Source: Octopus bimaculoides (taxonomy: Eukaryota). From it: 64,000 nucleotides of DNA. Positions 327 to 63,299 of the stretch are shown here, in pieces; position 1 is the first letter of the stretch, and every line of letters starts with the position of its first letter. The translations under genes were made by a program, and so were the position numbers. The notes beneath the pieces are model-generated. The model was not told the DNA's origin and searched no databases. It was given only the letters and a program-made list of their open reading frames with translations. The stretch is from contig NC_068984.1 in NCBI RefSeq assembly GCF_001194135.2, positions 147,566,840 through 147,630,839 of the forward strand, read 5' to 3'.

Positions 327-897
327 ATGTTTTGTTGTGCTGGTTGTAGGAAATCTAAATCAAAGAAGATTTTGCAAGTAACACCAGACAGCAAGAACTG
401 TGAAAATCCAATTTTCAAGTCAGGAAACGGAGTTGAGCCACCGATTGTTGAGAAAGTAGAACTTGACCTTCAGACAAAACCAGCCAGCGTAGAAACAACA
501 ACAGCAACAACAGACATCAAAAAAGAGACTGCAGCTGATCCAGTTGCATCTTCTAAAGAAAATACTTTTACCTCCGAAGCAAAGACGAAAGAATTTAAAA
601 AGGACATTGTTAAAAAGCCCAGCAGTGAGCAACCAGTTTCCTCTCTACCGTTTGCGAGTGAACTTATTAAAGCATCACAAAAAAGAGAAAAACGTGTTGC
701 CAGTGAGCTATCGAAAGCTCTTACCATTGCTGCAGAAGAAAGAGCTCGACTCAATTCTGGCGAAATGTCAGCTGAGCAAATGATAAAATCAATTGAGCGT
801 CTTGAGACAGCGGTGGTGAGCCTGGAACGGGTATCCACACGGCTTGAGAATATTGCCAACACTTCCGGAAAGTTAGTTAATACAGGCAACTCTGAAG
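327..897 (+). CDS. CAP1: CAP first coding exon 1a: long N-terminal extension followed by the RLE coiled-coil motif
   Basis: ATG at 327 follows an in-frame TGA at 300-302, with no AG in between. The C-terminal part MSAEQMIKSIERLETAVVSLERVSTRLENIA matches the CAP/Srv2 N-terminal RLE repeats. It ends at the donor GAAG|GTAAGA after 571 nt (phase 1), which fits exon 27832. Confidence 0.9.
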
Positions 898-17547: not shown

Positions 17548-19406
17548 TGCGTGCGTGTGTGTGTGTTGCTCAGCAGTTTTTAGCATACAATCAAAGAAGA
17601 AAATGATTTGCTTGACGCAACACAAAGGTTCTGATTTATGATAGGGTCCAAGTTCAAATCCAGCTGAACATTTTCAATATTGAATGCAATCACGACTCTT
17701 CCCAAACGTATGGTTTCAGGTTCAGTCTCACTGTGTGNNNNNNNNNNNNNNNNNNNNNNNNNNNNNNNNNNNNNNNNNNNNNNNNNNNNNNNNNNNNNNN
17801 NNNNNNNNNNNNNNNNNNNNNNNNNNNNNNNNNNNNNNNNNNNNNNNNNNNNNNNNNNNNNNNNNNNNNNNNNNNNNNNNNNNNNNNNNNNNNNNNNNNN
17901 NNNNNNNNNNNNNNNNNNNNNNNNNNNNNNNNNNNNNNNNNNNNNNNNNNNNNNNNNNNNNNNNNNNNNNNNNNNNNNNNNNNNNNNNNNNNNNNNNNNN
18001 NNAACACAGAAATGGAATAATTCAGGTGTGAAAGGTGATTTATGATTGTCAAGTGAAAAAAATGGCATCTTCACAAATAAATACATTCATTGCTTATATG
18101 GTGATGGTGATGGTAAGTGGTGGTGATGGTGAGGGTAAGTGGTGGTGGTGTAGTAGAAGCAATAATAGCAGCACTAGTGTAGTTAGTGGTGACTTGTAAC
18201 TTGTGCACTTTCTCTGCCTGTCATAGGAATGAATGTACAAGCTTGGCTGGGTGGTTAAGAAGTTTGCTTGCCAACCACATGGTTTCGAGTTCAATTTCAC
18301 TGCATCACATATAGCTTCTAGTGAAGTCTCGGATTAACCACTGTGGTTTTACCTGAGAAATTTGCTACACAGAAACTGTACTGAAACCTGTGTGTGTATC
18401 TTCACATTGACCCTGCTTGGGCAGCAGTGATGGGCTTATGACCCCACCACCACCGCCACCATCACCACACACTTAAATAAACAATAGGTTTGCTAATTTG
18501 ATGGTTCACTGGCGAGAAGACATGGAATAAAGTACCTTGGCCCCATCCACCTCTAGCTATTCCATTATACTTCCACCCCTAGCTATGCCCTAAACAAGGG
18601 GAGGGGACATGTTCATTCACACATCTCTAGACACACTTTGTTTCCACCAACTTCTGCTTTTCCTAGTATTTAGTACCTTTTTTGGGCAACTTTTTGTAGT
18701 TGTCACTTTTGGCTGGTGTTCTTGGGTGACAAGAACAGAATGACAGGTTGTGTGGTGACAGGGTGGGGAAGGTTGAGAAAAGGAATTATGTTGTGGTGGT
18801 CGTGGTGGGATTTTTGTAGTGTGAACTTATGTGATGATGGTGATAGTAATGGTGGTAATAAGTAATAATGGTGTTGAGGATAATGATGGTAGGTGGTTGC
18901 TGTCTGCTGTTGTTGGGGAATGGTGAGTGATCTGTTGATGATTGAATGGAGATGGGAACAGCGGTGAGAAAAGTTTGTTTTCTTTCTTTCTTTCTTTTTA
19001 GTAATCTACCCCTCTTCTGGGTGTCCCGTTGTTAGTGTTGGTGTTGAGGGGTCATAGCAATTCAAATAATGCTTGTTGGAGTAATGGAAGAGGTTGATTT
19101 AAGGTGCAGTTGCCCTAAAGGTAATGATTATGTTAGAGAGAAGGAGGGAGAGAAAAAGCAATTAAGTAACCTTCCTCATTTACTACATGAGTGGGGGACT
19201 GGAGTGGGGCTGGCCTAGAAAAGAAAGTAGGATTATCAGCCTGTAGCTGCAACAACACTAGTGTGTGTGTGTGTGTGTGTGTGTTGCTTGAGTACCACAC
19301 AAACCAACTAATCAGGAGCTTAGTGTCCTGGACTTGGTGTAAGGGGTCAGAGAAGTTTTGTGATAGTTTTGGTAGAGTTTTGAGTTTGTTTTCATGTCAC
19401 ATATAC

Positions 19407-19800
19407 ATGGGTACTTGTGTTAGTCACAGTCACAAAAAGCCATTGGTGGCTGTTGTGACACAGGACAGCAGTTGTACTGTAGGTGGTGGTGGTGGTGGTG
19501 GTGGTGGTGATGATGACAGTAGAGTTATTACAGGTAAAAGTGCTGTTTGTGTATCAGATTGCAATGAGGGCACTGAGACTACTTACTACGAGACTATCAA
19601 CAACTACCAGGAAAGCCACCACTACGTAAACAATTACCCCAACTACGATACTATCAAGGACCACTACTATGACAATAGCAAGAGCAGGACTTCTATCAGT
19701 GACGACGAGTATGACCTCTCCATTGATAAAATCTCACAACAAAAAGTGGGAATAGAAAAAGAGGAGGAGGAAGAGGAGGACAGCGATTATGCAGAAGTAG
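19407..19800 (+). CDS. CAP1: Candidate alternative first coding exon 1b of CAP: MGTCVSHSHKK... plus a Tyr-rich acidic tract ending DSDYAEV
   Basis: 131 codons plus 1 nt end at AG|GTAGGT (phase 1). The 3' part is rich in C-ending codons (TAC, AAC, GAC, CAC), unlike the surrounding intron. A phase-1 internal acceptor lies at 19557/19558. The 3' part is better supported than the ATG. Confidence 0.7.
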
Positions 19801-19932
19801 GTAGGTGTTAACACACTCTCTCTCCCATTGACCAACTTAACATCCGTAGCCCTCATCCTCTCTGCTCCAGAGATTCTGCTTACATGTAAATGTTGACTTC
19901 TTTGCAAGATTCACAATTTATAGTATTATCCA

Positions 19933-19965
<33 letters not shown>

Positions 19966-20460
19966 TTAACTGCATATGTATGTATGGAAGTGTCGAGAAG
20001 AATAATGTATGTGTCTGTGTGTGAGTATGTAGGGATGTCTATGTTTGTGTTAATGATAAAGGTGTTTGTGGATCAACTTCTTTCTGTATATGTATGCTTA
20101 CACACACACACACACNNNNNNNNNNNNNNNNNNNNNNNNNNNNNNNNNNNNNNNNNNNNNNNNNNNNNNNNNNNNNNNNNNNNNNNNNNNNNNNNNNNNN
20201 NNNNNNNNNNNNNNNNNNNNNNNNNNNNNNNNNNNNNNNNNNNNNNNNNNNNNNNNNNNNNNNNNNNNNNNNNNNNNNNNNNNNNNNNNNNNNNNNNNNN
20301 NNNNNNNNNNNNNNNNNNNNNNNNNNNNNNNNNNNNNNNNNNNNNNNNNNNNNNNNNNNNNNNNNNNNNNNNNNNNNNNNNNNNNNNNNNNNNNNNNNNN
20401 NNNNNNNNNNNNNNNNNNNNNNNNNNNNNNNNNNNNNNNNNNNNNNNNNNNNNNNNNNNN

Positions 20461-23118: not shown

Positions 23119-24104
23119 TTAAATTTAAATGTTTTATAAGTTTGTATTCCTTGGTGGGGATGGGGCCAGTCTTCTTTCGAGAAGCAAGAAAAGTTTTACT
23201 TCATACTTAGTCGAAGGGAACAAGAAAANNNNNNNNNNNNNNNNNNNNNNNNNNNNNNNNNNNNNNNNNNNNNNNNNNNNNNNNNNNNNNNNNNNNNNNN
23301 NNNNNNNNNNNNNNNNNNNNNNNNNNNNNNNNNNNNNNNNNNNNNNNNNNNNNNNNNNNNNNNNNNNNNNNNNNNNNNNNNNNNNNNNNNNNNNNNNNNN
23401 NNNNNNNNNNNNNNNNNNNNNNNNNNNNNNNNNNNNNNNNNNNNNNNNNNNNNNNNNNNNNNNNNNNNNNNNNNNNNNNNNNNNNNNNNNNNNNNNNNNN
23501 NNNNNNNNNNNNNNNNNNNNNNNNNNNNNNNNNNNNNNNNNNNNNNNNNNNNNNNNNNNNNNNNNNNNNNNNNNNNNNNNNNNNNNNNNNNNNNNNNNNN
23601 NNNNNNNNNNNNNNNNNNNNNNNNNNNNNNNNNNNNNNNNNNNNNNNNNNNNNNNNNNNNNNNNNNNNNNNNNNNNNNNNNNNNNNNNNNNNNNNNNNNN
23701 NNNNNNNNNNNNNNNNNNNNNNNNNNNNNNNNNNNNNNNNNNNNNNNNNNNNNNNNNNNNNNNNNNNNNNNNNNNNNNNNNNNNNNNNNNNNNNNNNNNN
23801 NNNNNNNNNNNNNNNNNNNNNNNNNNNNNNNNNNNNNNNNNNNNNNNNNNNNNNNNNNNNNNNNNNNNNNNNNNNNNNNNNNNNNNNNNNNNNNNNNNNN
23901 NNNNNNNNNNNNNNNNNNNNNNNNNNNNNNNNNNNNNNNNNNNNNNNNNNNNNNNNNNNNNNNNNTTTTTTTTTCACCTTTACACCTCTCCTCCCTTATT
24001 TTACTTGTCAAAACTAAGATTAGAAACTTGCTGAAAATTTGGACTGGTGAATCTTCTCAAATAACTCCCTCCATGTTATTTTTTTAATTTTGTGTGCATA
24101 TATA

Positions 24105-27831: not shown

Positions 27832-27935
27832 AAGTACTTTCACCGTTTGTAGTGGCTTACGATGACATTATCAAGGGACCCGTGGCAACATTTATTGCCC
27901 TCTCTTCCAAGATTAATGGCAATGTGAAGATCCAG
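27832..27935 (+). CDS. CAP1: CAP common exon 2 (start of HFD): (E)VLSPFVVAYDDIIKGPVATFIALSSKINGNVKIQ
   Basis: Long polypyrimidine tract and TTGCAG acceptor; CAG|GTAAG donor; phase 1 to 0. Aligns by eye with the CAP1 segment [32 protein letters not shown]. Confidence 0.95.
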
Positions 27936-30430: not shown

Positions 30431-30508
30431 GCCGCTATGGTGCAGGAAGCTTTCAATGCTCAGCGAAGTTTCCTTGTTCAAGTATCTCGCAGCAAAAAGC
30501 CAGCAAAT
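30431..30508 (+). CDS. CAP1: CAP exon 3: AAMVQEAFNAQRSFLVQVSRSKKPAN
   Basis: TTCCAG acceptor and AAT|GTAAGA donor; 78 nt, phase 0-0; HFD helix similarity. Confidence 0.95.
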
Positions 30509-31243
30509 GTAAGAAGTTGTCTCTTTATTTTGTCGGTCACCTATACATTGGCCATTGTTTTACAAATAATAAAAATATATTGTTTCCTTGAAATATTTTT
30601 GTATATTTAAAGATGGAACATGTACAACAACGACAACACTAATCAAAACTAAAACAATCAATTTACTGAAAGAAAAGATTACTTCTTATCTTTATGTAGA
30701 ATTTGTCTACAACAGTAGATGTTTCCAAATCAGGTTTGTTGTGCCATCAATAGTTATTAAAACACCCTTGTTTAGAGAAGACCATTTTATGAAAAGAGGT
30801 GTTCAGTTACAAAATGCTCAGAACTGTTGCTTTGTGACCCCCTGTAGCAAATCACAGTGTCTAGTTTACAAAACTCTCAGCCATTTACTGCAAGCCAGCT
30901 TGCTGGGGAGTTCATAGGTTTCATTTGATGTTTACCCTGGCTGATAATTATCCTAAACAAGATGAAGTTAATATGTGTTGTCAATGTATTTGGTATTGCA
31001 AAGACATGCAGCCTAGTGGTGAGGATGTTGGGCTTATGATCATTACATCATTGGTTCAATTCTTTGAGCAAGATATTTCATTTTGCATTGCTCCAGTTTA
31101 CTGAAGAATAAGTACGAGCCTTCAGCTAGGAACACAAAGAGCTGCATTGAATACTGCTAAGCCTCCACTCCATCACTCTAGAATGATTTTTCTTTAACTG
31201 AAGGTTGATCTTCTATAAATAGCTGAGCCTTGGATCGTTCCTG

Positions 31244-31284
<41 letters not shown>

Positions 31285-31294
31285 NNNNNNNNNN

Positions 31295-31339
<45 letters not shown>

Positions 31340-31575
31340 GATGTCATGCTTAGTCAAAAACAGGATGATCAAGATTATGTCTATGTTTGTTCCTAACTTC
31401 ATACACACCTAAAACAGTGAAAGGACTATCCATGCTCTCAACTCATACTTGCCAGTGAGTTATGGCTCTGCTTTATTATTTGAAACTATTTTGCTAAAAA
31501 CTGAAAATAACATTTCTGAATTTATTCCATGACTGTTTAAATATTGTTTTTTGTTTGTTTTTTTCCTCTTCTCAG

Positions 31576-31629
31576 GAGCAAATGAACCACCTTTTGAATC
31601 CAACAAGCTCTAAACTGCAAGCTATTCAG
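31576..31629 (+). CDS. CAP1: CAP exon 4: EQMNHLLNPTSSKLQAIQ
   Basis: CTCAG acceptor and CAG|GTAAGA donor; 54 nt, phase 0-0; corresponds to the LSDLLAPISEQIKEV region of CAP1. Confidence 0.93.
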
Positions 31630-32139
31630 GTAAGATGTCTTCATGTGTTCATCAGGATTTTACTGAGACAGGTTTTATTATGTACACTGCCTTATATGGC
31701 ATATGACCTTCATTTTGTGTTAGTGAGAAAATGCTGCTGTGAAAATTGGTTCTGTGTTTTTAGACTTCAGGTTTGACTAAAGACACAGGCATGGTCATAG
31801 ATAGCTTGAGGTGTGGTTATGAATCCCCGTTATGTTAACCAGGGTGATTGATATTATACATCACTCAAGTAAAGATTTAACCTTATCACTTGGTGCCTTG
31901 GATTCCTTTAGCAAAGTCCACCCTCTTACAAACTTTTGGTTCAGGATTTCAGTTTCAGGATACCTTCATCTCTTCTCCACCCCATAATCTTGGAGAACCT
32001 GTGAAGAATCATGGATGCTACCTTTCCCCTTGAATAAACAAAAAAAAAAAAATAGCTGAGCTGAGGTTACACAATATCATTCTCTACCCAACACTATCTC
32101 CACCTAGTAGCCCCACCATAGTACCACCATCCTCTTTTT

Positions 32140-32720
32140 CACACATTACCGTGAAACTCTATTATACATTGCAAACCTATCAAAGGAAGGCTAACTGGCA
32201 AAATAGCTTTTGTGTGTGGCAAATGCACAGGGGCAATAAACCCTGAAAATGTGTAGAAAACAGCTTCTGTCACATGCCAGGGGAAAAAAACTGGAAGTAG
32301 TTGATAGCTTCTGTTACCTAGGTGACCAAGTCAGTAACTGGGGTGGATCTAGAATAAGAATAGGCTGCGCAAAGTACAGAGAGCTCCTACCTCTGCTGGT
32401 GACAAAGGGCCTCTTGCTCAGAGTGAACGGTAGACTGTATGACGCATGTGTGTGAACAACCATGCTACATGGCAGGGAAATATGGGCCGTGACTGTTGAG
32501 GACATGTGTAAGCTTGTAAGAAATGAAGCTAATATACTCCACTGGATGTGTAATGTTAGTGTTCATACATGACAGAGTGTAAGTGCCCTGAGAGAAAAGT
32601 TGGACATAAGAAGCATCAGTTGTGGTGTGCAAGAGAGATGACTGCAACTAGTATGGTCATGTGATGTGTATGGATGAAGACAGCTGTGCGAAAAGGTGTC
32701 ACACCCTAACAAGCCAAGTG
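32140..32720 (+). mobile_element. RTE LINE 3' fragment
   Basis: FVCGKC...LEVVDSFCYLGDQV...RIRIG.AKYRELLPLL..KGL.LRV.GRLYDACV; same family type as the element at 58-60 kb. Confidence 0.85.
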
Positions 32721-32759
32721 AGACCATAACCGTGGCCTATGCCAGTGTTGCATAACCAG

Positions 32760-33285
32760 CCAATTCAAGAATACCCTTCAATCATTGGGCAATAAACTAT
32801 GCTTGCGAAGACCTGTTCAGTCAAGTGAAATCATTGTCGCAGCCAATGCCTGTACCACCTGACTGGTATGTAAATAGCACCATTTGAGCATGATTCATGC
32901 CAGTCCCACCAGATTGGCTACAGTAGCCAATGTGCCATACGAATGTGGTTGATGCCAGTGCCACCTGACTGGTCCCATGCTGGTGGCATGTAAAAAGCAC
33001 CATTCGAGCGTGGTTGTTGCCAGTGCTGCTTGACAAGTTCCCGTGCCAGTGGCATGTAAAAAGTACCATTCGAGCATGGTTGATGCCAGGACCGCCTGGT
33101 GGCATGTAAAAAGCACCCACTACACTCTCAGAGTGGTTGGCTTTAGGAAGGGCATCCAACTGTAGAATCCTTGCCAGATCAGATTGGAGCCTGATGTAGC
33201 CTTCTGGCTTGCCAGTCCTCAATCAAACTGTCCAACCCATGCCAGCATGGAAAGCAGACGCTAAACGATGATGATGATGATGATG
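32760..33285 (+). mobile_element. SINE with internal tandem GGTGGCATGTAAAAAGCACC repeats and (GAT)n tail (related copies near 8230-8620, 13756-13975, 29770-30300, 35050-35420, 47390-47640)
   Basis: Shared segment AAAAGCACCCACTACACTCTC.GAGTGGTTGG..TTAGGAAGGGCATCCAGCTGTAGAAA and ATGATGATG tail seen in several copies. Confidence 0.8.
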
Positions 33286-33649
33286 ACCTTCATTCTTATT
33301 TTACAATTAATTTGCATTATGAATTTAAAAGGTAAAAATCTCTTTGGGGCAAAATTGACATCAATTCATTTACATCCTAAAGGATAGAGAGTTTCTTACA
33401 GACTGAAAACAGCGGCAATTGTGTCTTTTGATTCCATTCTAAGAATAGCTAGAGATTAAACTACAACCACAGTGGACAATGGCTAGTAGTAGTCCTGAAG
33501 AACTAGGTCATATTACTATTTACCCTCAATAAAATCTAGGTTTCTTTTTTCTTTCTTTAGAGGTTTATATATATATATATNNNNNNNNNNNNNNNNNNNN
33601 NNNNTATATATATACCTGTACATATATATGCATATACTCATTGATTATT

Positions 33650-33690
<41 letters not shown>

Positions 33691-35009
33691 TCCAGTATTT
33701 GTTAAAACAGTATAAGCCCACATCAAAAATAAGTAAATAAAACAAATGATTCTGATAAAATCCCCAACCAACACAATTATAACTCCAAATCTCAAAGGTT
33801 GAATTAAAATAATTAATGAAAGACCTATTATTAATATCATATTAAAATATGAAAACATTTTAATCTATAACTTCCGGTGTTATTATTTTACTCTTAAACT
33901 GTTTCTTGTCCTTTCACCAAAAGTAAATAACTTTTTCAAATTAAATATATTAATAAATCATAACAATCGCAAGAATAATCTGTGTGAACTCACATAAACC
34001 CCTCAACGGTCCAACCACCTTTGTTGTACAACATACATCATTCTTCTTGTTGCATTTGTCTAGCACACTCCTGTCTGGAATCTCCTGTCACTGAGGTATT
34101 ATTAAGATGACTGAAGTTCATGTGAAATACATTCGTAAAATGCTGGTTTCAATTGATTTAATACTGAAAACCTATCTGACTAGTTTAAATCCTCACACTG
34201 TATACAAATAAGAAAAACAGGTTAGCAGAAATAAACCACAGTTTATTTCTGTATCAAGCCATATGCTCTAATGTAACCTATCTGGCACTGATCGCTCATT
34301 AGCCCTGTCTTGTGTGTCTCTTTCAAATGGACTTCCCGAAGTGATTTTGTGTTGTTGTTTTGTAAGCAGCTCTTCTTATGATGGTCTCTGTCAACAAAAT
34401 CTTTATTATTTATATTATGAAGGTTTTTTTTATTACATTGTTGTTGTTGTAGGAGATGTTAGACAATCTTTTTTTAATGGTTATATTCCCACAATATATT
34501 TTTAGAAATGTATTGCATATGAGTGACAGAGAAGAGAAAGTAGTTTGTGAAAGTATGCTGTTTACGTTGAAGTATTGAGGGGACTCTATAAAGTAATTAT
34601 TCTTTGAAGCTCTAAAATTTGGGTTGTATGAGTCTTGGGGAGTGTTGTAACCCTGAGAAAGAAAATCTTACTTAAGAAGAGATTTTAGAATTTTTATTGT
34701 GTCACCATGTTTAATGCTGGTGAGACAATAAAACGGACAAAACCCACTGTAGAGCAGTTGGTAACAAGAGTATCCAACCAAAACCTTATCATATACAGCA
34801 ACAAAGATTGGCAGCTTTTTTTTTTTGCTGTTATTGTGTGCTTTAGATGAAGGACTACAGTAAGTGCTGGAAAAGACTCGTCCAACATACGTCAACATGG
34901 GAAAATGAACATAAAATGATGATGGTAATTACATGTGAATAAATGCATCCATCTAGATAGGTGCACAACACTCAGTCATATATGTATAAACATACATCTT
35001 GTATGTATG

Positions 35010-35051
<42 letters not shown>

Positions 35052-36837
35052 ATCATCATCATTTAATGTCCATTGTCTATCCTGGCATGAGTTAGACAGT
35101 TTGACCCGGGCTGGTAAGCTGGAAGGCTGCAGCAGACTCCAGTCTGTTTTGGCATGGTTTTCTATGGCTAGATGCCCTTCCTAATGCCCACCACTCCGAG
35201 AGTGTAATGGGTACTTTTAGGTGCCACTGGCAAGGGTACCATTTGCGTGGCACCAATATCTGTCACAAGTGCGGTTTTGCTGTGCTTGATGGGTCTTCAC
35301 AAACATGGCATAATGCCAAATGGTCTCAGTCCTTTTCTCCCTGAGGCCTAATGCTCAAAAGAGTGCTTTTACATGCCACTGGCACAGGTGCCATTTGTAT
35401 GACACCAGTATCTGCCATGACTGTGAATTTAAGTGTTGTGTATGTTCACTGTCTATGGCTACCTGGTATTATCCATGGTAATTGCACAATTGTCTTTGAT
35501 GCTACCTCAGGAATTCCTCAGTGTACATTGAGTATAAAAGAGACAGAAAATGGTATACAAGGGAAACTTAATTGTTCACGACGATTGTTTTGAGATGTCT
35601 TGTGTTGATCCGTTGTTGGTGGGGAAAGAACGCTAACAAAATGGTTTTATTAAATGTGAGCGAAACCAAGATCATTTAACAAGATAACGTTTATTACATC
35701 ACCTGACGAAATGCTTCTGCCCTGAGGGGGTCCACCACAACTAGTTGTATAGTTTCCCACCCGCAAGGGATCAATGCAGGGTGTCCAAACGATCATTGGT
35801 AAGCCAAGAAGTTTCCAGTGCATTCCATTTTCCATTTCTATCATCTGTTATATCTATAGACACACACACACACACACAGGCATGGTGTAGGCATAGATGT
35901 GTCGTTTTAGTTTCCTTCCTGACCATGTAGTTTTGAGTTCAGTCCCACTGCACAGCACCTTGAGCAAGTCTTTTCTACTATAGTTCCAGGCCAACCAAAG
36001 CTGAGTGGATTTGATAGATGGAAACTGAAAGAAGCCTGTCATATATGCATGCATGTGTGTGTGTGTTTGTGTTTCCTCTTGTCTTGACATCCTTTGGTGG
36101 TTGTAAACCAGTCCTACAAGTGAGGGTCTTCATTTCAAGTCTTCCATGAAAAATGTCTGGCTATGAGAAAAGACTTCCTTGCTTGGTAACGGGTGTTGGC
36201 AATAGGTAAGGCATCAAGCCATAGAAAATCCATCCCCCAAAATTCTGTCTGACCCATGCAAGCAAGAAAAAGTGGACATTAAATGTTAGTGAGGAGATGC
36301 AGTACTAATTTTTCTACATCACCGAGTAGACTTATTGACCTACATATAGAAGATAGTTATTGCATTTAACCTATTTATTTGTCTCTTAAATCCTGACTAC
36401 TTAGGGAAATCATTCCATGGCCAACAGCAGTTAGAACTTCCTGCTAACCCAATGACTTTTCATTGGAATTTGGTTGCATTAATTATGTTTTTTTTCTCCT
36501 TTCCTGTCCCTCATCATATCGAAGGGAAAAAGTGTGGGAATATGGGTCTCCATCTCAGGCAGAAAATTAATCATTTATCTCAAAATAGAATATTATATTA
36601 AAAATATAAATTAAAGACAAACTAAGAGTGCAACACTTTAGCATAGAAACTATTGTATTATTTTAGAATAGCTGATCAAAGCAAAAGCCACACTGTTAAT
36701 TGGGAAATTATTGAATCATTGTGTGTATATGGGAATGTGTCTACATAAACTTGTATATATAAATAAATAAAACAGAAATGTTATGTAAAAATTTCCAAGT
36801 AATTTTGTTTACCAGTTATATGTTCTGTCTCTTTCAG

Positions 36838-36927
36838 GAATTGCGTGAGAAAAACCGTAGAGATCCATACTTTAACCATTTATCAGCCATCAGTGAATCA
36901 ATCCCAGCGCTTGGATGGGTAACTTTG
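36838..36927 (+). CDS. CAP1: CAP exon 5: ELREKNRRDPYFNHLSAISESIPALGWVTL
   Basis: Contains the family signature REKNR...FNHLSA.SESI.ALGWV; TTTCAG acceptor and TTG|GTAAGT donor; 90 nt. Confidence 0.98.
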
Positions 36928-38147
36928 GTAAGTTCTCATTTTTTATTTTACTTTCACAGAAATTTAAGCAGAGTTTTGGGAGTAGCTTAACTTTCCTAGT
37001 TTGTTGTTTGAGTAATTTTTAATGCCGTTTCTACAACTTTTAGTAGTGATCTTGGGGTAATGTTTAAGATGTTAATTTAACCCCTTTGTTTCTATATTTC
37101 TGTTAAAATATACTGTTTTTGTTTCAATATAGAAATGCTGTATTTGCTCAAGTCGCTTCCCCTAATTCACTGTTAAAACTTGGTACAAAATTTTTTCCAT
37201 GCCAGTTTTTTCAGTTAAATTCTCATTGCCCTTTCTAGACTCATGGGAGAAATTGAAATTAGTGTTACACGTCGTCAAGAAATATTTGTACTAGGCATTA
37301 CCATGTTGTTAAGAACTATGCTTCCCAGCCACGTGCTTTTTGGCTCAATCTCAGTGTGTTGCACCTTGAGCAAGTGTCTTCTATGATAGGCCAGTGATGA
37401 CCAGAGCTTTGTGAGTGGATTTGGTAGGTGGAAACTGAAAGAAGTCCACTCTGTTGTGTATGTATGTATTTGTGTCTCCTTGTCTTGACATCATGTGACA
37501 GCTGTAAATGGAAGTCATTCATTTTCAAATATCCTGTGAAAACATGTCTGTTCGTGGAGGAATATTACCTTATTTGGAAACAGATAAGAGTTGACAATAG
37601 GATCGGGATCCAACTGTAGAAAACCTGCCTCAATAAATTCCTTCTGATCCATGCAAGCTTGCAAAAATGAACATTAAAACAATGAGGATAACTATTCCTA
37701 TAGGTTTAAGAGATGAACCCGACTTAAGGCATGTATTTACAGTTCAATCACCTCAGTCAGCTAGAATCAAGTATCTTGTTCATGCAATTAAAATGACACT
37801 GGAGTAAAATATACAAAGCCCAGTATACCCATCATGTATACCCAGTATACCCATCATGACTATCCGTCTGATAAGGGTACACCAGGCCCATGCATCATAA
37901 CCAAATGTGATATGTGGTGACATAGTGATCTGATACCAAAATAAACAGTGCACGACCTTGCAGGTGGGGCCCAGTTAGAATTTTCTTTAGATTAAGTAGC
38001 TCATCCGGTTCAAAAGGTCCCTGAATAAGGGTTGTTTAAGGTTGTTGAACGAAACACCCATGTTTCCAAAGGTAAATTATCCAAACCCCAAAGAATTCCT
38101 TTCGGCACATGGCTATGATTCTTCCCCAAAAGTTTGTTATTATTTAA

Positions 38148-38363
38148 CCCTTTGTTTGCCAACCTGGCTGAAACCGGCTCTGGCAATACAAATGTCTTGT
38201 TTTCATAAGTTTTGAATTAAAATCTTCCACCAAACCTTAGTCACAATTTATGTTCCTAACACCAGCTGAATGATAACCAAGTTATTTTACTAAATTCTTT
38301 GTTATATTTAAAGTAATTGAAAGAAACACAGAGCATCTCAACAGGAATATGGTAACGAAATGG
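38148..38363. mobile_element. piggyBac-like MITE
   Basis: TTAA on both sides (38144-38147 and 38364-38367); imperfect termini CCCTTTGTT...AACGAAATGG; about 216 bp. Confidence 0.5.
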
Positions 38364-39261
38364 TTAAGACAGCGAGCTGGCAGAATTGTTAGCAAAGCAG
38401 GCAAAATACTTAGAAGCATTTCCTCTGTCTTTACATTCTGAGTTCAAATTCCACCAAGGGCAATTTTGCCTTTCATCCTTTTGCTATTGATAAATTAAGA
38501 ACCGGTGGAACACCGAGGTTGATGTAATTAACTAGCCTTTAATAGAAAGGATTATTATTACTTGTAGTAGTAGCAGTAGTAGTAGTCCACCACAGTTGAC
38601 TTTGCCATTTGTCCTTTTGACATTGATGAAATAAGTTTGAACCCAAGATACCAAGAGCACTGGGGGGGGGCATTGTAATCGCCTCCCCACCTGCAAATTT
38701 CAGGCTTTGTGTTTATCATAGAAAGAAGTTTCATTATTACCCTGCATCTAACATACAGGCACAGCATCCTCCGTCCCAGGGCTAAGTTGACTTGCGAGCT
38801 TTATTGTGACCTAAGTAGTGCCAGTGGCACGGAAAAAGCACCAAGCACACACTGTAAAGGGGTTGGCATTAGGAAGGGCGTCCACCACCCATAGAAACCA
38901 GACAGCAGAGCACAATCCAATCCTTTCATTCATTGGATCCTTGTCAATGCATCCAACCCATGCCAGCATGGAATACAGATGTTAATGATGATGATGATTA
39001 TGAATAGATGTGAAGTAAAACTGCTGCAGATGGAATTCTCTTTCCACGACAGCAATTACCCACCAATCACTATACACATTAATGAGCTGATAGCAAATTA
39101 AATGTGAAACAGTGTTATTATGTTGAATAAATTTAGAACTAAATGAAGAGTGAAAAACCATCCTCTTCCTCTCTAACCAAAATTGGCAGCAAGTTACCAA
39201 AATGAAATAATGATTTCCTTGTGTCCTTGAGGTTTCATGAACTTAATTACTTTAATTGCAG

Positions 39262-39344
39262 AATACTCCGGTATCTTACATCAAGGAAATGTCTGATTCA
39301 GCACTGTTCTACACCAACCGTGTTCTCAAAGAATTCAAAGAGAA
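39262..39344 (+). CDS. CAP1: CAP exon 6: NTPVSYIKEMSDSALFYTNRVLKEFKE(K)
   Basis: Contains the signature KEM.D.A.FYTNRVLKE; TTGCAG acceptor and AA|GTAAGT donor; phase 0 to 2. Confidence 0.97.
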
Positions 39345-40255
39345 GTAAGTCTCCAGTTATTTTTATCCTCATCCACCAAATCATCATCATCATTTCATGC
39401 TACTTTCCATGCTTGCATTGGATTGGATGGAATTTGTGGGCATAGATTTTATCTGCCCATCCTGTTACTAAACCTCAGCTGCTTCCCCCAACGACCAGAC
39501 ATGTTTTCATGGAAGTCTGCAAATGGACACCATTTGCTTGATGGTGGCACTCTTTTACAAGGAGACAATAACAGACATGCACTCACTTACATATACACAC
39601 ACAAACATACCCATGTACACACACTCAATGGGGCTTCCTTTCAGTTTCCATCTACCAAATCCACCTGCAAGGCTTTGATCAGCTTGGAGCTAAAGTAGAA
39701 GACATTTTCCCAGTGTACCACTGTGTGATACACTAGACAAAGTTCTTACCCTTCTGCGTCAATAAATTTGATTTTCCTCCAAAGTAGTTCAATCATTTAA
39801 ATTCTTTTTTAATTGTCTTTAATTAAGGGTCTGCTCTCTCTCTTCCTTCTTTTCTGTCTCCCCTCCTTTATCTTAAAACACAAAAAAAAAAAACCATCTA
39901 CAAACATCAATGATGTTTGAGTCAATCCCGCTTAAATTACTCGTCCACCACTGCCAAATAAAAAGTCCAGTCTACTTAGAAATCTTGGAAACTACATATT
40001 ACATTGGATTCTCAGTGTGTGTGTGTGATGAAAATGTTGTTTAAATATAATCACAGGTGTTATCTTCTATCTTTCTTCACCAGAATTGATTGTTGGTTCA
40101 TGACATTATGTACATTAGCACCGACCTTATCATTAGACTAAAATATATCCTTATTGATGATGATGATGATGATGGTGGTGGTGGAGGTAATAATATAGGT
40201 GTTACTGTTGATTATGATGATGGTGATAACTATGATGATTTTGGTTTACTTGTAG

Positions 40256-40361
40256 AGATGCAACTCATGTTGAGTGGACCAAAGCTTGGATTAATGCCTT
40301 GAAAGAGCTTCAATCCTATGTCAAAGAATACCACACTACAGGACTCTCTTGGAATCCACAG
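40256..40361 (+). CDS. CAP1: CAP exon 7 (end of HFD): DATHVEWTKAWINALKELQSYVKEYHTTGLSWNPQ
   Basis: Contains the signature HV.W...EL..Y.KE.HTTGL.W; TGTAG acceptor and CAG|GTCAGT donor; phase 2 to 0. Confidence 0.97.
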
Positions 40362-45579: not shown

Positions 45580-47170
45580 TTGTATAGTAGATATTTTATC
45601 TCTTTACATACTCAAGTCAGCTCACTAATTGCTCTGCTGACGAGTTTTAGTAAGAGTGGTGAGGTAAAGGCAGGAAGAGGGGTGGGCAATGCTATCATCT
45701 TCATCATCATCATCATCCTCATCACCTCCTCCTCTTCTGGCTCACTGCCCCCTTCAAAAGACTGTATGGTTAACTTAGCTTTTACACATTTCTGCAAAAA
45801 TGTTTTATTTGTAACTATAGAAGGCAATTATCTTCTAAAATTATTTTTCTCTCCCACTTTTCCTCCTCCTTCTCCCCACCTTTTTTCTTGTTTCTTTTTG
45901 TCATTTTACCACTTTTGAGAAAAGGGGGAAAGAAAAAGGGGATAGTTGTATAATTAAAACACACGGTGTTACTTTTGCTGTTGTTGTTGTTACTGGTGCT
46001 GTAACAGATAGAATGGAAAGCTTATCAGCAGGTCTCATTGGCTGACAATTTAATTTGATATAAAAACAAAACAAATCTAGAGGACAAGGAACAAGGGCAG
46101 TGATTGCTGTAGGATTAATAGTAGTGGTGGTGGTGGTGGTATCAGAAGGGAACCAGAAATTCTTGACGCCAACTGTATGAAACTATTTGTTGCATCATTG
46201 CTATGATTCCTTATTAACAACAATACTATTACCACTACTACTACTACTAATAATAATAATAATAATGCTTTCTATTATAGGCACAAGGCCTGAAATTTGG
46301 GGGAGGGGTATAGTCGATTACATCAACCTCAGTACCTGACGGGTATTTATTTTATTAACCCTGAAAGGATTAAAAGCAAAGTTGATCTCAGCAGGATTTC
46401 AGCCCAGAATGTAAAAAAAACCAAAAGAAATGACAGAAAGCATTTTGTCTCAAAGACAGCTCTTTCCATTTGACAATGGTGGTAATTCTTTGTATGTTGT
46501 TGTTGCCGTCTCCCTCTCTCTCTCTCTCCTTTTCCTGTACTTCCTTCAGGTTGGGTAGCCATGTATTTCCTTTGCAGTAGTACACCTGTTTCTGTCTTCA
46601 TTCCTGATCTCTCTCTCTCTCTCGGGCCAGGTAACCTGGTACCTCCTCTACAGCAAGACACTCGTTTCTGTCTCTCTGGCCTCACTATAACCTTTCATCA
46701 TCTGACACAAAATCACCTCCTCCAAAACCCCCTCCCCTCTCAAAAGAGTTGTTTTCTTTTTGTTTGTTTTTTTGTCTTGCAAGGTACTTGGTGACCCCTG
46801 TCAGTGCAGGTGCCACTTAAAGAGCACCCAGTCCACACTGTGAAGTGGTTGGTGTTAGGAAGGGCATCCAGCTGTAAAAATCCTGCTAAAACAGTTAGAG
46901 AGGTCTGGTGCAGACTTCTGCCTGGCCAGCTCTTGTGAAACGTCCACCTTCCATGGAAGCTGGATGTTAAATGATGATGGTGATGATGTATATGTAGATA
47001 TATGTATGTATGTATGTATATGTGTGTGTGTGTGTGTGTGTGTATAGATCGGAAGAGNNNNNNNNNNATATATATGGTAAATTCCCAAAAATGAAAAGCA
47101 AACAAAAAAAAATGCAAGGACGTAGTACATGAAAAGTATTAGCAGATGCTCAGGGAAGGAAAGAAAGATG

Positions 47171-57276: not shown

Positions 57277-58069
57277 NNNNNNNNNNNNNNNNNNNNNNNN
57301 NNNNNNNNNNNNNNNNNNNNNNNNNNNNNNNNNNNNNNNNNNNNNNNNNNNNNNNNNNNNNNNNNNNNNNNNNNNNNNNNNNNNNNNNNNNNNNNNNNNN
57401 NNNNNNNNNNNNNNNNNNNNNNNNNNNNNNNNNNNNNNNNNNNNNNNNNNNNNNNNNNNNNNNNNNNNNNNNNNNNNNNNNNNNNNNNNNNNNNNNNNNN
57501 NNNNNNNNNNNNNNNNNNNNNNNNNNNNNNNNNNNNNNNNNNNNNNNNNNNNNNNNNNNNNNNNNNNNNNNNNNNNNNNNNNNNNNNNNNNNNNNNNNNN
57601 NNNNNNNNNNNNNNNNNNNNNNNNNNNNNNNNNNNNNNNNNNNNNNNNNNNNNNNNNNNNNNNNNNNNNNNNNNNNNNNNNNNNNNNNNNNNNNNNNNNN
57701 NNNNNNNNNNNNNNNNNNNNNNNNNNNNNNNNNNNNNNNNNNNNNNNNNNNNNNNNNNNNNNNNNNNNNNNNNNNNNNNNNNNNNNNNNNNNNNNNNNNN
57801 NNNNNNNNNNNNNNNNNNNNNNNNNNNNNNNNNNNNNNNNNNNNNNNNNNNNNNNNNNNNNNNNNNNNNNNNNNNNNNNNNNNNNNNNNNNNNNNNNNNN
57901 NNNNNNNNNNNNNNNNNNNNNNNNNNNNNNNNNNNNNNNNNNNNNNNNNNNNNNNNNNNNNNNNNNNNNNNNNNNNNNNNNNNNNNNNNNNNNNNNNNNN
58001 NNNNNNNNNNNNNNNNNNNNNNNNNNNNNNNNNNNNNNNNNNNNNNNNNNNNNNNNNNNGGGGGGGAGC
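57277..58069. other. Assembly gap (other large gaps at 6244-6812, 13006-13754, 17738-18002, 20116-20460, 23229-23965)
   Basis: Runs of N. Confidence 1.
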
Positions 58070-61779: not shown

Positions 61780-61803
61780 ATTTTAACTTTGCTTCTCTTT
61801 TAG

Positions 61804-61982
61804 GTCTAAAGAAAGTTTCTGATGACCAGAAGACCCACAAAAACCCAACCTTACGAAAGGATGGAGCATGCCCTGTGAAATCACCTGCCAACGCCAGCTC
61901 TAAGAAAACTCCTTCCTATGGTGGCAATGCTCCAGTGACAAATGTTCCTCTCATAGAACTGCAGGACAAGAAATGGATCATC
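61804..61982 (+). CDS. CAP1: CAP exon (WH2 C-terminal half, P2 linker, start of CARP): (G)LKKVSDDQKTHKNPTLRK...PLIELQDKKWII
   Basis: Contains LKKV...KTHKNP and EL..KKW motifs; TTTTAG acceptor and ATC|GTAAGT donor; phase 1 to 0. Confidence 0.97.
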
Positions 61983-62714
61983 GTAAGTAAACACACTTGG
62001 CTTGACTTTTTTTTTTACTTTGTTTCTAACCCTGATGTGTTGGGTGGAGAGGCAAAAGTGGATTGATGGTCAGACAAGAAGTCCAACTCCCAACAGTGGT
62101 CCTCTCATGCATTTTTCACCCAAACATAAAAGTCCACCACATATTAGAGAATAGTGTTGCTCATTGTTGTTAGTGATGAGTGATTCATTAGCTTCAGTTC
62201 TTCCTTGCATTAGAAAAGCTATTTACAATGTGACCTATCCAGGAGGAAATCTATCTCTCTTCTAATGAACATTATGGAAATAAAAGTTCTGGCCACACGA
62301 AACCTTGTGATTTGCAAAAAGGAAAGAATTTCCTTCCTTTCTTCCTTTAGTTGATCTAACCCTTTAAATTACTTTCATCCAGCTTCTTATGCTGGTGTGC
62401 GTTGCTTAAAACTTCTTCAAACCCTTTTTCTAACCAGATTCCTTTCCTTTCTTGTTTAAAGAATTTATTCCATGTCTTTGCATTTTGAACTGGTATTGAA
62501 TGTTTTGCTTGAGAGACATGACGACCATCATCACTGAAGCAGTGGCAACACACACACACACACACACAGGCTTCTATACAGTTTCTATCTACCAATTTCA
62601 TCCACAAGACATGTTGGTCAACCCATACATGAGTGAGAGAGAGAGATATATATATATTTATATAGGTTCGCCACTGATTCTCTTTCCTGGTAATTCCTTT
62701 TTCTTACCTTCCAG

Positions 62715-62838
62715 GAATATCAAAACAACAACCAAAACATCCAGTTGACAGACACTAGCATGAAGCAAACTGTTTACATCTACAAGTGTCGGAATTCAGT
62801 TGTCAAAGTAACTGGCAAAGTTAATTCTATTGTTGTAG
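62715..62838 (+). CDS. CAP1: CAP exon (CARP beta-helix): EYQNNNQNIQLTDTSMKQTVYIYKCRNSVVKVTGKVNSIVV
   Basis: Contains KQ.VYIYKC....V.GK.NSI; TTCCAG acceptor and G|GTAAGT donor. The gene continues past the window end. Confidence 0.97.
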
Positions 62839-63299
62839 GTAAGTGCATCATTTTCATATCTTCTGTTTCATGTTTGCATTAATTCAAAAAGCCATCGAAT
62901 CTTCCTGTTGCCAATCCTCACCACTTTCCAAGTAAGGTACTCGTTTTCATCTTTTATTTGTTTCAGTCGTTAGAGGTCATGCTGGGGCACCACCTTGAAG
63001 AATTTTAATTAAACAAATCAACTCAAATACTTTTTTTTTTTTAAGCCTAGTACTTATTTTATAGACAACACACACAGAGGCTTCTTTCAGTTTTCATCTA
63101 CCAAACCCACTCACAAGGCTTTGTTCAGCCCAAGGCTATAGTAGAAGACACTCGTCCAAGGTACCATGCACTGGGATTGAACCTAGGGAAGCAAACTTCC
63201 TACCATGCAAGCCACACCTGAGCCAATTTTACTATAACCAACAGTCCTGCCTGTTGCCTCTCCTCTTTCAACGCAAATTCATCTGACTGCAGTTAATTT

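What the first reader, a model, noticed from the sequence alone, without database searches (positions are those of the whole stretch)
19407..19800. Exon 1b: N-myristoylation consensus plus a phosphotyrosine-docking-like tract on CAP
Seen: the exon starts MGTCVSHSHKK (Gly2, Cys4, Ser6, downstream lysines), which fits the MGxxxS myristoylation consensus with an adjacent palmitoylatable Cys. The last 81 residues hold 10 Tyr in acidic context: YETI, YDTI and YAEV (YxxI/V type) and YVN, YPN and YDN (YxN type). Established: YxN is the Grb2 SH2 ligand, and lipid-anchored disordered Tyr-rich proteins act as kinase scaffolds. Inference: this CAP isoform could couple tyrosine-kinase signalling directly to actin monomer recycling at the membrane. 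I do not recall such a CAP isoform, but cannot verify novelty. Caveat: the poly-Gly is a (GGT)n microsatellite, and a short out-of-frame uORF starts at 19394.
Basis: partly seen in the sequence, partly recalled or inferred. Interest (0 to 1): 0.8.

Follow-up and report, generated by a model that had tools for sequence, protein, structure and literature searches.

The report
Alternative lipid-anchor exon of octopus-like CAP
Inside the first intron of a cephalopod-like gene for the actin regulator CAP lies a real, conserved coding exon that could give the protein a fatty-acid membrane anchor and a tyrosine-rich tail, but no transcript data could be reached, so both its use as a first exon and its signalling role are unproven.

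Summary
Bases 19407-19800 (+) read MGTCVSHSHKK...DSDYAEV and end at a GT donor. The myristoylation pattern, Cys4, the (GGT)9 poly-Gly, the uORF at 19394, 10 Tyr in the last 81 residues, and three YxN plus three YxxI/V motifs are all there.

The exon lies in a CAP gene, 18.5 kb downstream of exon 1a (327-897). Exon 1a encodes MFCCAGC... plus the coiled-coil oligomerisation domain. Both first exons end in phase 1 with a G and join in frame to exon 2 (27832). The spliced product gives a full-length Pfam CAP_N match (E 1.6e-64).

One other species (three Logan contigs) carries the same ORF:
- All 7 indels are in frame; 1 of 17 flank indels is.
- dN/dS is 0.50.
- MGTCVS, all 10 Tyr, 4 Cys and the donor are conserved.

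So this is coding sequence. Two things stay open:
- 19558-19800 is exactly 81 codons behind an acceptor-like AG, so the Tyr tract could instead be a cassette exon after exon 1a, leaving the MG start unused.
- No transcripts or other cephalopod sequences were reachable.

Myristoylation, phosphorylation and SH2 docking are inference only. I rate it a plausible new variant of known CAP N-terminal isoform diversity, of moderate interest.

The parts
327..897 (+). CAP exon 1a. Encodes MFCCAGCRKSKSKK (Cys-rich, palmitoylation-like start), about 150 disordered residues, and the canonical N-terminal coiled coil (IERLETAVVSLERVSTRLENIA). Ends in phase 1 with G|GTAAGA.
   Evidence: sequence and frame. 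(weak match to the human CAP1 N-terminus). (gastropod CAPs start MFCCC and carry the same coiled coil).
19283..19360 (+). Conserved non-coding block just upstream of the exon (92% identity, against 69-72% in the neighbouring flank). Candidate 5'UTR or core promoter of exon 1b, or an intronic splicing regulator.
19394..19423 (+). Out-of-frame uORF (MSHIHGYLC*) overlapping the main ATG. Conserved in the orthologue.
19407..19800 (+). 'Exon 1b' open reading frame: 131 codons plus 1 base (phase 1).
   Evidence: Orthologous ORF. All 7 indels in frame. dN/dS 0.50. Single copy in the window.
19407..19427 (+). MGTCVSH: N-myristoylation consensus with Cys4. The first six residues are identical in the orthologue.
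19482..19509 (+). (GGT)9 microsatellite encoding poly-Gly. Not conserved (GGDELSP in the orthologue).
19556..19557 (+). Acceptor-like AG (gctgtttgtgtatcAG|AT; 10 of the 20 upstream bases are pyrimidines), conserved in the orthologue. If used after exon 1a it gives G+AT=GAT, in frame.
19558..19800 (+). Acidic Tyr-rich tract: exactly 81 codons with 10 Tyr. It is the most conserved part of the exon (86% DNA identity overall, with a 96% peak at 19579-19628; dN/dS 0.36). Either the 3' part of exon 1b or a phase 1-1 cassette exon.
19585..19676 (+). Internal duplication. ACTACGAGACTATCAA... matches ACTACGATACTATCAA... at 83%, and ACCACTACGTAAACAAT matches ACCACTACTATGACAAT at 76%. This makes two YxTI...HYxN units.
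19801..19806 (+). 5' splice site TAG|GTAGGT (7 of 9 matches to consensus). The surrounding 19 nt are identical in the orthologue.
27832..27935 (+). CAP exon 2 (acceptor ttttcattgcAG|AAGTAC). Start of the helical folded domain, (E)VLSPFVVAYDDIIKGP...
30431..40361 (+). CAP exons 3-7, which complete the helical folded domain: 30431-30508, 31576-31629, 36838-36927, 39262-39344, 40256-40361. All have AG...GT borders.
   Evidence: Pfam CAP_N positions 1-159 of 159, E 1.6e-64.
61803..62846 (+). WH2-containing exon (LKKVSDDQKTHKNPTLR, 61803-61982) and the first CARP-domain exon (62715-62846). The gene runs off the window.

Best explanation
19407-19800 is a genuine, lineage-restricted coding exon of the CAP gene. 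It most likely serves as an alternative first exon.

Shown: transcription starting in the conserved block upstream would give an mRNA whose first in-frame ATG is 19407. The exon's phase-1 donor (19800|19801) joins in frame to exon 2.

The product swaps the 190 residues of exon 1a for a 131-residue disordered head fused about 9 residues before the helical folded domain. Exon 1a carries an MFCC palmitoylation-like start, a linker and the coiled-coil oligomerisation domain.

Inferred from consensus only: Gly2 is N-myristoylated after Met removal and Cys4 is palmitoylated. This would pin to the membrane a CAP that can only dimerise through its C-terminus, not form the higher oligomer.

Inferred, weaker: the duplicated acidic YxTI/YxN tract is phosphorylated by Src- or Abl-type kinases and recruits SH2 proteins, or otherwise acts as a multivalent interaction tract. 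The overlapping uORF and the weak Kozak context would keep expression low or regulated.
For: 1. Coding status. An orthologous ORF is present in three Logan contigs of one other species.
   - All 7 ORF indels are multiples of 3, against 1 of 17 in the flanks.
   - dN/dS is 0.50, bootstrap 95% interval 0.27-0.99.
   - All 10 Tyr and 4 Cys are invariant. P=0.03 for keeping all Tyr under random substitution.
2. Link to CAP.
   - Same strand, inside intron 1.
   - The donor is conserved.
   - Phase 1 ending in G, exactly as exon 1a does.
   - The spliced model is open through exons 2-7 and gives Pfam CAP_N at E 1.6e-64.
3. First-exon use.
   - 19407 is the first in-frame ATG after an upstream stop in both species.
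   - MGTCVS is 6/6 conserved.
   - The three indels between the ATG and 19557 are all in frame.
   - A 92%-conserved block lies 50-120 nt upstream.
   - No conserved, frame-compatible acceptor lies upstream of the ATG.
4. The NMT pattern is met in both species and is rare at random ATGs, 0.6%.
5. Precedents.
   - Many arthropod CAP isoforms start directly at the helical domain without the oligomerisation domain.
   - Toxoplasma makes a palmitoylation-dependent, differently localised long CAP isoform (PMC6785269).
   - Mollusc exon-1a-type N-termini start MFCC(C), so membrane anchoring of CAP may be a molluscan theme.
6. Disorder. AF2 mean pLDDT is 35.8. Mean hydropathy is 0.39, below the 0.46 charge-hydropathy boundary. 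There is no Pfam family.
Against: - No transcript, CAGE or proteomic evidence could be reached. The protein databases offered contain no cephalopod CAP at all, so they neither confirm nor deny the isoform.
- Only one, closely related, second species is available. Non-coding flanks are themselves 69-83% identical, so the excess conservation is modest.
- The N-terminal 50 codons are barely constrained (dN/dS 0.72).
- The ATG has T at -3 and an overlapping conserved uORF.
- CpG o/e around the exon is 0.10, against 0.48 at exon 1a and a window median of 0.23. This argues against a CpG-type promoter.
- The exact 81-codon phase 1-1 geometry of 19558-19800 fits a cassette exon equally well.
- N gaps at 20116-20460 and 23229-23965 could hide further exons.
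- The Tyr motifs partly reflect an internal duplication.
Confidence: 0.5

Rival explanations
1. Cassette-exon reading. Only 19558-19800 is an exon. It is a symmetrical (phase 1-1) 81-codon alternative cassette spliced between exon 1a and exon 2. It inserts the Tyr-rich acidic tract into the linker between the oligomerisation domain and the helical folded domain. The MGTCVS 'start' is an intronic extension of the ORF and is never translated. A hybrid exon used both ways is also possible.
For: - An acceptor-like AG at 19556-57 is conserved in the orthologue.
- 243 nt is exactly 81 codons.
- Exon 1a's terminal G plus AT gives GAT, the same codon as in the continuous ORF. The 1a+cassette+exon 2 model is open.
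- Constraint is concentrated in this part (dN/dS 0.36 against 0.72; 86% against 82% identity, with a 96% peak).
- Conserved intronic flanks are typical of regulated cassette exons.
- Long variable linkers between the coiled coil and the helical domain exist in insect CAPs.
- The region is CpG-poor and shows no promoter signature.
Against: - The polypyrimidine tract is poor: 10 of 20, against 11-19 of 20 at the six confirmed acceptors of this gene.
- The upstream 150 nt stay open with a conserved ATG, and their three indels are all in frame. On my rough estimate, not a computed value, that has about 1-3% probability for neutral intron.
- MGTCVS is 6/6 conserved.
Confidence: 0.25
2. Not part of any mature CAP mRNA. 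The ORF is either a chance-conserved stretch of a slowly diverging intron, or the exon of an independent small transcript nested in CAP intron 1.
For: - Flanking non-coding DNA is nearly as conserved as the ORF (77-83% against 85%).
- Mismatches are spread almost evenly over codon positions (16:19:21).
- The probability of staying stop-free under 56 random substitutions is a high 0.23.
- No homologue exists anywhere else among 1.8 billion representative proteins.
- The strand is G+T-rich, which lowers stop-codon frequency.
Against: - 7 of 7 indels are in frame, against 1 of 17 in the flanks.
- dN/dS is below 1.
- All Tyr and Cys are retained.
- The GT donor is perfectly conserved, with the same phase and the same split-codon base as exon 1a.
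- The sequence is single copy and not derived from a transposable element.
Confidence: 0.1
3. The exon is used, but the Tyr-rich tract is not an SH2 docking site. It would be an aromatic/acidic low-complexity 'sticker' region (Y/N/H/D-rich) that mediates weak multivalent interactions, clustering or autoinhibition of the adjacent helical domain. The YxN and YxxI matches would be by-products of an N/Y-rich duplicated repeat.
For: - The tract is built from a duplicated unit and an (A)ACTAC-rich DNA motif.
- Asn is abundant (7 of 81), so YxN arises easily (shuffle P=0.036 for YxN alone, 0.16 for YxxI/V/L alone).
- There is no homology to any known docking protein.
- The YETI-to-YDTI spacing of 15 residues does not fit an ITAM.
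Against: - The combined motif count exceeds shuffles (P=0.0066).
- The orthologue keeps or gains motifs: 5 YxN and 3 YxxI/V.
- DDEYD and EEDSDYAEV are classic acidophilic tyrosine-kinase contexts (established knowledge).
Confidence: 0.3

Closest known systems
Toxoplasma gondii longCAP / shortCAP (Hunt et al. 2019, PMC6785269)
   Same: One CAP gene makes two N-terminal proteoforms. The longer one carries N-terminal Cys residues whose mutation abolishes its membrane-proximal (apical) localisation, so a lipid-anchored CAP isoform already exists.
   Different: It arises by alternative translation start, not by an alternative exon. It uses palmitoylation only, with no Gly2 myristoylation motif and no Tyr-rich tract. 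Apicomplexan CAP lacks the N-terminal half altogether. There is no sequence homology.
Arthropod CAP (capulet) short and long isoforms
   Same: Dozens of predicted insect isoforms begin MSV(N/L)G(Y/F).DI..., directly at the helical folded domain. They therefore lack the coiled-coil oligomerisation domain, as the exon-1b product would. Long isoforms carry variable disordered linkers.
   Different: None of the 119 N-termini inspected has an MGxxxS start or a Tyr-rich head. These are predictions from annotation, not tested proteins.
Mollusc canonical CAP N-terminus (octopus-like exon 1a; gastropod CAPs P0002 Candidula, P0003 Bulinus)
   Same: It comes from the same gene and fills the same position in front of exon 2. 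It also begins with an acylation-like motif, MFCC(A/C), resembling the GAP-43 MLCC start (the GAP-43 resemblance is from my own knowledge).
   Different: Exon 1a keeps the coiled-coil oligomerisation domain. It has Cys-only (palmitoylation-type) chemistry and is not Tyr-rich. Exon 1a and exon 1b show no sequence similarity.
Lipid-anchored phosphotyrosine docking proteins (FRS2/SNT: myristoylated MGSCCS start with several YxN sites; PAG/Cbp and LAT: palmitoylated). Own knowledge, not tested here.
   Same: A works-like resemblance: an N-terminal acyl anchor, a disordered region, and several Tyr in YxN / YxxΦ contexts with acidic neighbours.
   Different: No homology was detected. There is no PTB or transmembrane segment. 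The effector attached here is an actin-monomer recycling enzyme, not an adaptor tail. Phosphorylation is unknown.
CAP-ABL interaction (Freeman 1996; Wills 2002; reviewed in PMC7543520)
   Same: It already connects CAP to a tyrosine kinase pathway (Slit-Robo-Abl in growth cones).
   Different: That link runs through ABL's SH3 domain binding CAP's proline-rich P1 motif, not through phosphotyrosine docking on CAP.

Membership tests
Cyclase-associated protein (CAP/Srv2) gene | Helical folded domain (Pfam CAP_N PF21938) encoded downstream and in frame | tested here: met
   The spliced model 1b+exons 2-7 matches PF21938 over positions 1-159 of 159, E 1.6e-64, 217 bits against a cut-off of 27.
Cyclase-associated protein (CAP/Srv2) gene | WH2 motif and CARP domain downstream on the same strand | tested here: met
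   tblastn finds LKKVSDDQKTHKNPTLR at 61803-61982 and the start of CARP at 62715-62846. The rest of CARP lies beyond the window, and the P1 exon was not located.
Cyclase-associated protein (CAP/Srv2) gene | N-terminal coiled-coil oligomerisation domain | tested here: not met
   It is present in exon 1a (IERLETAVVSLERVSTRLENIA) but absent from the exon-1b product. That isoform would be an oligomerisation-domain-less CAP, like the arthropod short isoforms.
N-myristoylated proteins | Met1-Gly2; no charged, aromatic or Pro residue at position 3; S/T/A/G/C/N at position 6; not Pro at position 7 (PROSITE PS00008) | tested here: met
   The regex matches in the window and in the orthologue. Background is 16 of 2699 ATGs.
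N-myristoylated proteins | The ATG is the real translation start, and Gly2 actually carries myristate | not testable with these tools
   This needs 5'-end mapping and metabolic labelling or mass spectrometry. Against it: T at -3 and an overlapping uORF.
Dual-acylated SH4-type membrane anchors (Src-family, G-alpha-i, FRS2) | A Cys within a few residues of myristoyl-Gly2, plus nearby basic residues | tested here: met
   Cys4, K10 and K11 are present. Cys4 and K10 are conserved. This shows sequence compatibility only.
Phosphotyrosine docking scaffolds | Several Tyr in SH2-ligand contexts (YxN; Yxx[ILV]) with acidic neighbours, conserved between species | tested here: met
   Six of 10 Tyr are in such contexts (shuffle P=0.0066). 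There are 7 in the orthologue, and all 10 Tyr are invariant. Caveat: internal duplication.
Phosphotyrosine docking scaffolds | Homology to a known docking family (FRS2, Dok, Gab, PAG, LAT) | tested here: not met
   No significant Pfam hit. No relatives other than the orthologue in the 5.8-billion and 1.84-billion protein searches.
Phosphotyrosine docking scaffolds | Tyr phosphorylation and SH2 binding demonstrated | not testable with these tools
   Experimental only.
ITAM | YxxL/I - x(6-8, up to 12) - YxxL/I | tested here: not met
   YETI (residues 61-64) and YDTI (80-83) are separated by 15 residues.
Alternative first exon | Own transcription start or promoter upstream, and no acceptor in use | tested here: inconclusive
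   For: a 92%-conserved upstream block; 19407 is the first in-frame ATG in both species; no conserved frame-compatible acceptor upstream of it. Against: CpG o/e is 0.10, and there is an internal acceptor-like AG with exact 81-codon geometry.

The most novel reading that the evidence does not exclude
Octopods evolved a lineage-specific CAP proteoform that is dually acylated, lacks the oligomerisation domain, and carries a duplicated phosphotyrosine-docking tract. Src/Abl/RTK signalling at the plasma membrane would then directly recruit SH2 adaptors onto the enzyme that recycles cofilin-bound ADP-actin. That would be a signalling scaffold fused to CAP, not described in any organism. Together with the MFCC start of exon 1a, it would mean that mollusc CAP is constitutively membrane-targeted through two interchangeable lipid anchors.
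Probability: 0.12. Interest if true: 0.6.

Novelty: new variant of a known kind. Interest (0 to 1): 0.35.

Why it matters
CAP is a core, universally conserved regulator of actin turnover. Its N-terminal oligomerisation domain is considered important for full activity.

An isoform that drops that domain for a lipid anchor and a tyrosine-rich tract would show how a housekeeping actin enzyme is retargeted and rewired by swapping one exon. It would also add an animal example to the single experimentally supported lipid-dependent CAP isoform (Toxoplasma).

The claim is cheap to test with existing octopus RNA-seq. If the exon turns out to be only a linker cassette, or barely expressed, the finding reduces to ordinary lineage-specific alternative splicing in a disordered region.

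Tried and rejected
1. Protein searches with the exon-1b peptide.
   - The word-indexed 5.8-billion database returned only one cluster: three genomic Logan contigs from SRR11869384, SRR11869385 and SRR11869391, apparently one species.
   - The exhaustive HMMER search of 1.84 billion representatives added only three bacterial-type repeat-protein matches, which I read as spurious.
2. A search with exon 1b plus the CAP helical-domain exons, to catch a spliced transcript product, found no protein covering both parts. No cephalopod CAP appears in that database at all, so its silence is uninformative.
3. The exon-1a peptide search, meant as an internal control for divergence, gave no hits.
4. Exact-sequence look-ups of the window's read-through ORFs, to identify the species or other assemblies, found nothing on record.
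5. A search for the SRA run numbers in the literature gave no papers.
6. Metagenome scans, one protein-guided and one with a degenerate YYETINNYQE pattern, found nothing.
7. Internal-exon hypotheses with an acceptor upstream of the ATG: the only frame-compatible AGs (19349, 19376) lack a pyrimidine tract and are not conserved. Rejected.
8. TE or repeat origin: the exon is single copy in the window. Rejected.
9. Structured RNA: no Rfam hit in the whole window. The 98%-conserved upstream block does not fold unusually (z = -1.66).
10. The AF2 model is uninformative beyond low confidence.
11. The search for core promoter motifs (TATA, Inr+DPE) was by eye only and found nothing convincing.

Full report
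**What is there**

Bases 19407-19799 on the + strand translate to MGTCVSHSHKKPLVAVVTQDSSCTVGGGGGGGGGDDDSRVITGKSAVCVSDCNEGTETTYYETINNYQESHHYVNNYPNYDTIKDHYYDNSKSRTSISDDEYDLSIDKISQQKVGIEKEEEEEEDSDYAEV. Base 19800 (G) starts a split codon and is followed by GTAGGT.

- The PROSITE myristoylation pattern, with Cys4 and K10/K11.
- A pure (GGT)9 microsatellite encoding the poly-Gly.
- A 9-codon out-of-frame uORF starting at 19394.
- Ten Tyr in the last 81 residues, with YETI, YDTI and YAEV plus YVN, YPN and YDN.

These features are uncommon by chance, but not extraordinarily so.
- The NMT pattern follows 0.6% of ATGs in this window.
- Six of ten Tyr lie in YxN or Yxx[ILV] contexts, which occurs in 0.66% of composition-preserving shuffles.
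- However, the tract contains an internal duplication of a YxTI...HYxN unit (83% and 76% DNA identity between copies). The motifs are therefore not independent events.

**The gene**

The window looks like a eukaryotic scaffold: N gaps, dinucleotide microsatellites and reverse-transcriptase fragments.

Its exons are:

| Exon | Coordinates | Content |
|---|---|---|
| 1a | 327-897 | MFCCAGC start, linker, coiled coil |
| 2 | 27832-27935 | start of helical folded domain |
| 3 | 30431-30508 | helical folded domain |
| 4 | 31576-31629 | helical folded domain |
| 5 | 36838-36927 | helical folded domain |
| 6 | 39262-39344 | helical folded domain |
| 7 | 40256-40361 | helical folded domain |
| WH2 exon | 61803-61982 | WH2 motif |
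| first CARP exon | 62715-62846 | start of CARP domain |

- Exons 2-7 all have AG/GT borders.
- Exon 1a encodes MFCCAGCRKSKSKK..., a long polar linker, and the canonical coiled coil IERLETAVVSLERVSTRLENIA.
- Exon 1a ends in phase 1 with G|GTAAGA.
- Exon 1b also ends in phase 1 with G, at TAG|GTAGGT.
- Both therefore complete the same GAA codon with exon 2.
- The spliced models 1a+2-7 and 1b+2-7 are both open, and both give a full-length Pfam CAP_N (PF21938) match (E about 1e-64).
- In the 1b product the helical domain starts about 9 residues after the junction. The oligomerisation domain defined in the CAP literature (PMC7543520) is missing.

**Is exon 1b really coding?**

The peptide has one relative in 5.8 billion proteins. 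It is a 153-residue ORF on genomic Logan contigs from three runs, which differ by a handful of SNPs and evidently come from one other species. That locus aligns with the window over 1.1-1.4 kb, including non-coding flanks. The second species is therefore close, and raw identity says little:

| Region | DNA identity | Source |
|---|---|---|
| ORF | 85% | |
| Flanks | 77-83% | |
| Flanks further out | 69-72% | |

The informative signals are these:
- All seven indels inside the ORF are multiples of three. At least four are outside trinucleotide repeats. Only 1 of 17 flank indels is a multiple of three.
- dN/dS is 0.50, with a bootstrap interval of 0.27-0.99.
- All 10 Tyr and all 4 Cys are invariant although overall identity is 75%. 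Keeping all ten Tyr has P=0.03 under random substitution, conditional on the frame staying open.
- The 19 nt around the donor are identical.

Staying stop-free is weak evidence on its own (P=0.23). The exon is single copy in the window. It has no Pfam family, and AF2 predicts no fold (mean pLDDT 35.8). This fits a fast-evolving disordered segment.

I conclude with fair confidence that this is coding sequence spliced to CAP exon 2.

**First exon or cassette?**

Inside the ORF, gctgtttgtgtatcAG|AT at 19556-57 looks like an acceptor. From 19558 to 19800 is exactly 243 nt, or 81 codons. Exon 1a's terminal G plus AT recreates the same GAT codon. A transcript 1a-cassette-2 is therefore also in frame. 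It would place the Tyr tract in the linker between the coiled coil and the helical domain.

For the cassette reading:
- Constraint is concentrated in the 81 codons (dN/dS 0.36, against 0.72 for the first 50 codons).
- The AG is conserved.
- CpG o/e around the exon is 0.10, against 0.48 at exon 1a.
- The ATG has T at -3 and an overlapping uORF.

For the first-exon reading:
- 19407 is the first in-frame ATG after a stop in both species.
- MGTCVS is identical in both.
- The three indels between the ATG and 19557 are all in frame.
- A 92%-conserved block lies just upstream (19283-19360).
- The pyrimidine tract of the internal AG (10 of 20) is below the range of this gene's real acceptors (11-19 of 20).
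- No conserved, frame-compatible acceptor exists upstream of the ATG.

I put first-exon use at about 0.5-0.6, cassette-only at about 0.25, and no use at all at about 0.1. The exon could also be used both ways.

**Function**

Nothing beyond sequence compatibility can be shown here. If Gly2 is exposed, the N-terminus is a good NMT substrate with a palmitoylatable Cys4 and downstream lysines. It would tether to membranes a CAP that lacks the oligomerisation domain.

The acidic Tyr tract contains plausible kinase and SH2 motifs: YETI resembles the Src-family pYEEI optimum, YxN is the Grb2 type, and DDEYD and EEDSDYAEV are acidophilic kinase contexts (all established knowledge). The orthologue keeps or increases them, with 5 YxN and 3 YxxI/V.

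An equally economical reading is an aromatic/acidic low-complexity interaction tract born from a duplicated N/Y-rich repeat. It is not an ITAM, because the spacing is 15 residues.

**Comparison with what is known**

- Alternative CAP N-termini are common. Many arthropod predictions begin at the helical domain without the coiled coil.
- Toxoplasma makes a long isoform whose localisation depends on two N-terminal cysteines that are predicted palmitoylation sites (PMC6785269).
- Gastropod CAPs begin MFCCC, like exon 1a here. Acyl-type N-termini may therefore be a molluscan CAP trait.
- CAP is already tied to a tyrosine kinase through ABL-SH3 binding to P1 (PMC7543520).
- Literature searches for cyclase-associated protein together with myristoylation or palmitoylation surfaced no myristoylated, Tyr-rich CAP head. 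None of the 119 homologue N-termini inspected has one.

I class this as a new variant of a known kind: N-terminal proteoform diversity of CAP.

**Limits**

- The databases offered contain no cephalopod CAP.
- Exact look-ups of the window's ORFs failed.
- Metagenome scans were empty.
- Two N gaps lie between exon 1b and exon 2.
- The decisive data, junction reads and 5' ends from existing octopus transcriptomes, could not be accessed.

Noticed in passing
window 327-368 (exon 1a start): The canonical CAP first exon begins MFCCAGCRKSKSKK, a Cys cluster followed by basic residues that resembles the GAP-43-type palmitoylation start (resemblance from my own knowledge). Two gastropod CAPs in the database (Candidula, Bulinus) begin MFCCC. 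A palmitoylation-like N-terminus therefore seems conserved in mollusc CAP. I did not see this discussed in the CAP papers I opened.
   Followed up: partly
window 18885-18934: This 50-nt block is 98% identical to the second species, the most conserved stretch in the aligned 1.4 kb. It contains ATG|GTGAGT, a consensus donor immediately after an ATG. It has no Rfam hit and no unusual RNA fold (z = -1.66). It could be a regulatory element or the end of an unrecognised upstream exon. It is out of frame with exon 2 if spliced directly.
   Followed up: partly
window 19533-19534: An internal donor-like site, ACAG|GTAAAA, also lies in phase 1 and ends in G. A short form of exon 1b (19407-19533, MG head without the Tyr tract) would also join exon 2 in frame. 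The site is polymorphic (ACA/ACC) in the second species.
   Followed up: no
window 55577-56284 and 58333-59292, minus strand: Long ORFs with reverse-transcriptase-like motifs (FMDDIKIY, LLCADDLDL) indicate retroelement fragments inside the large CAP intron. An N gap at 57277-58059 lies between them.
   Followed up: no
window 40362-61800: The exon(s) encoding the proline-rich P1 region of CAP were not found by a poly-Pro scan or by tblastn. They may lie in an N gap (47058-47067 or 57277-58059) or may be too divergent.
   Followed up: partly
L001/L002/L003 against window 19467, 19519, 19532, 19670, 19770: Five SNPs separate the three Logan samples inside the ORF (3 nonsynonymous, 2 synonymous). 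Four fall in the roughly 1 kb of flanks. The exon therefore shows no sign of reduced within-species diversity, though the numbers are small.
   Followed up: partly
whole window: The window is strongly CpG-depleted (median CpG o/e 0.23). The only windows near 0.8 are next to N gaps at about 5.5-7 kb and about 13 kb. Exon 1a sits at 0.48.
   Followed up: no
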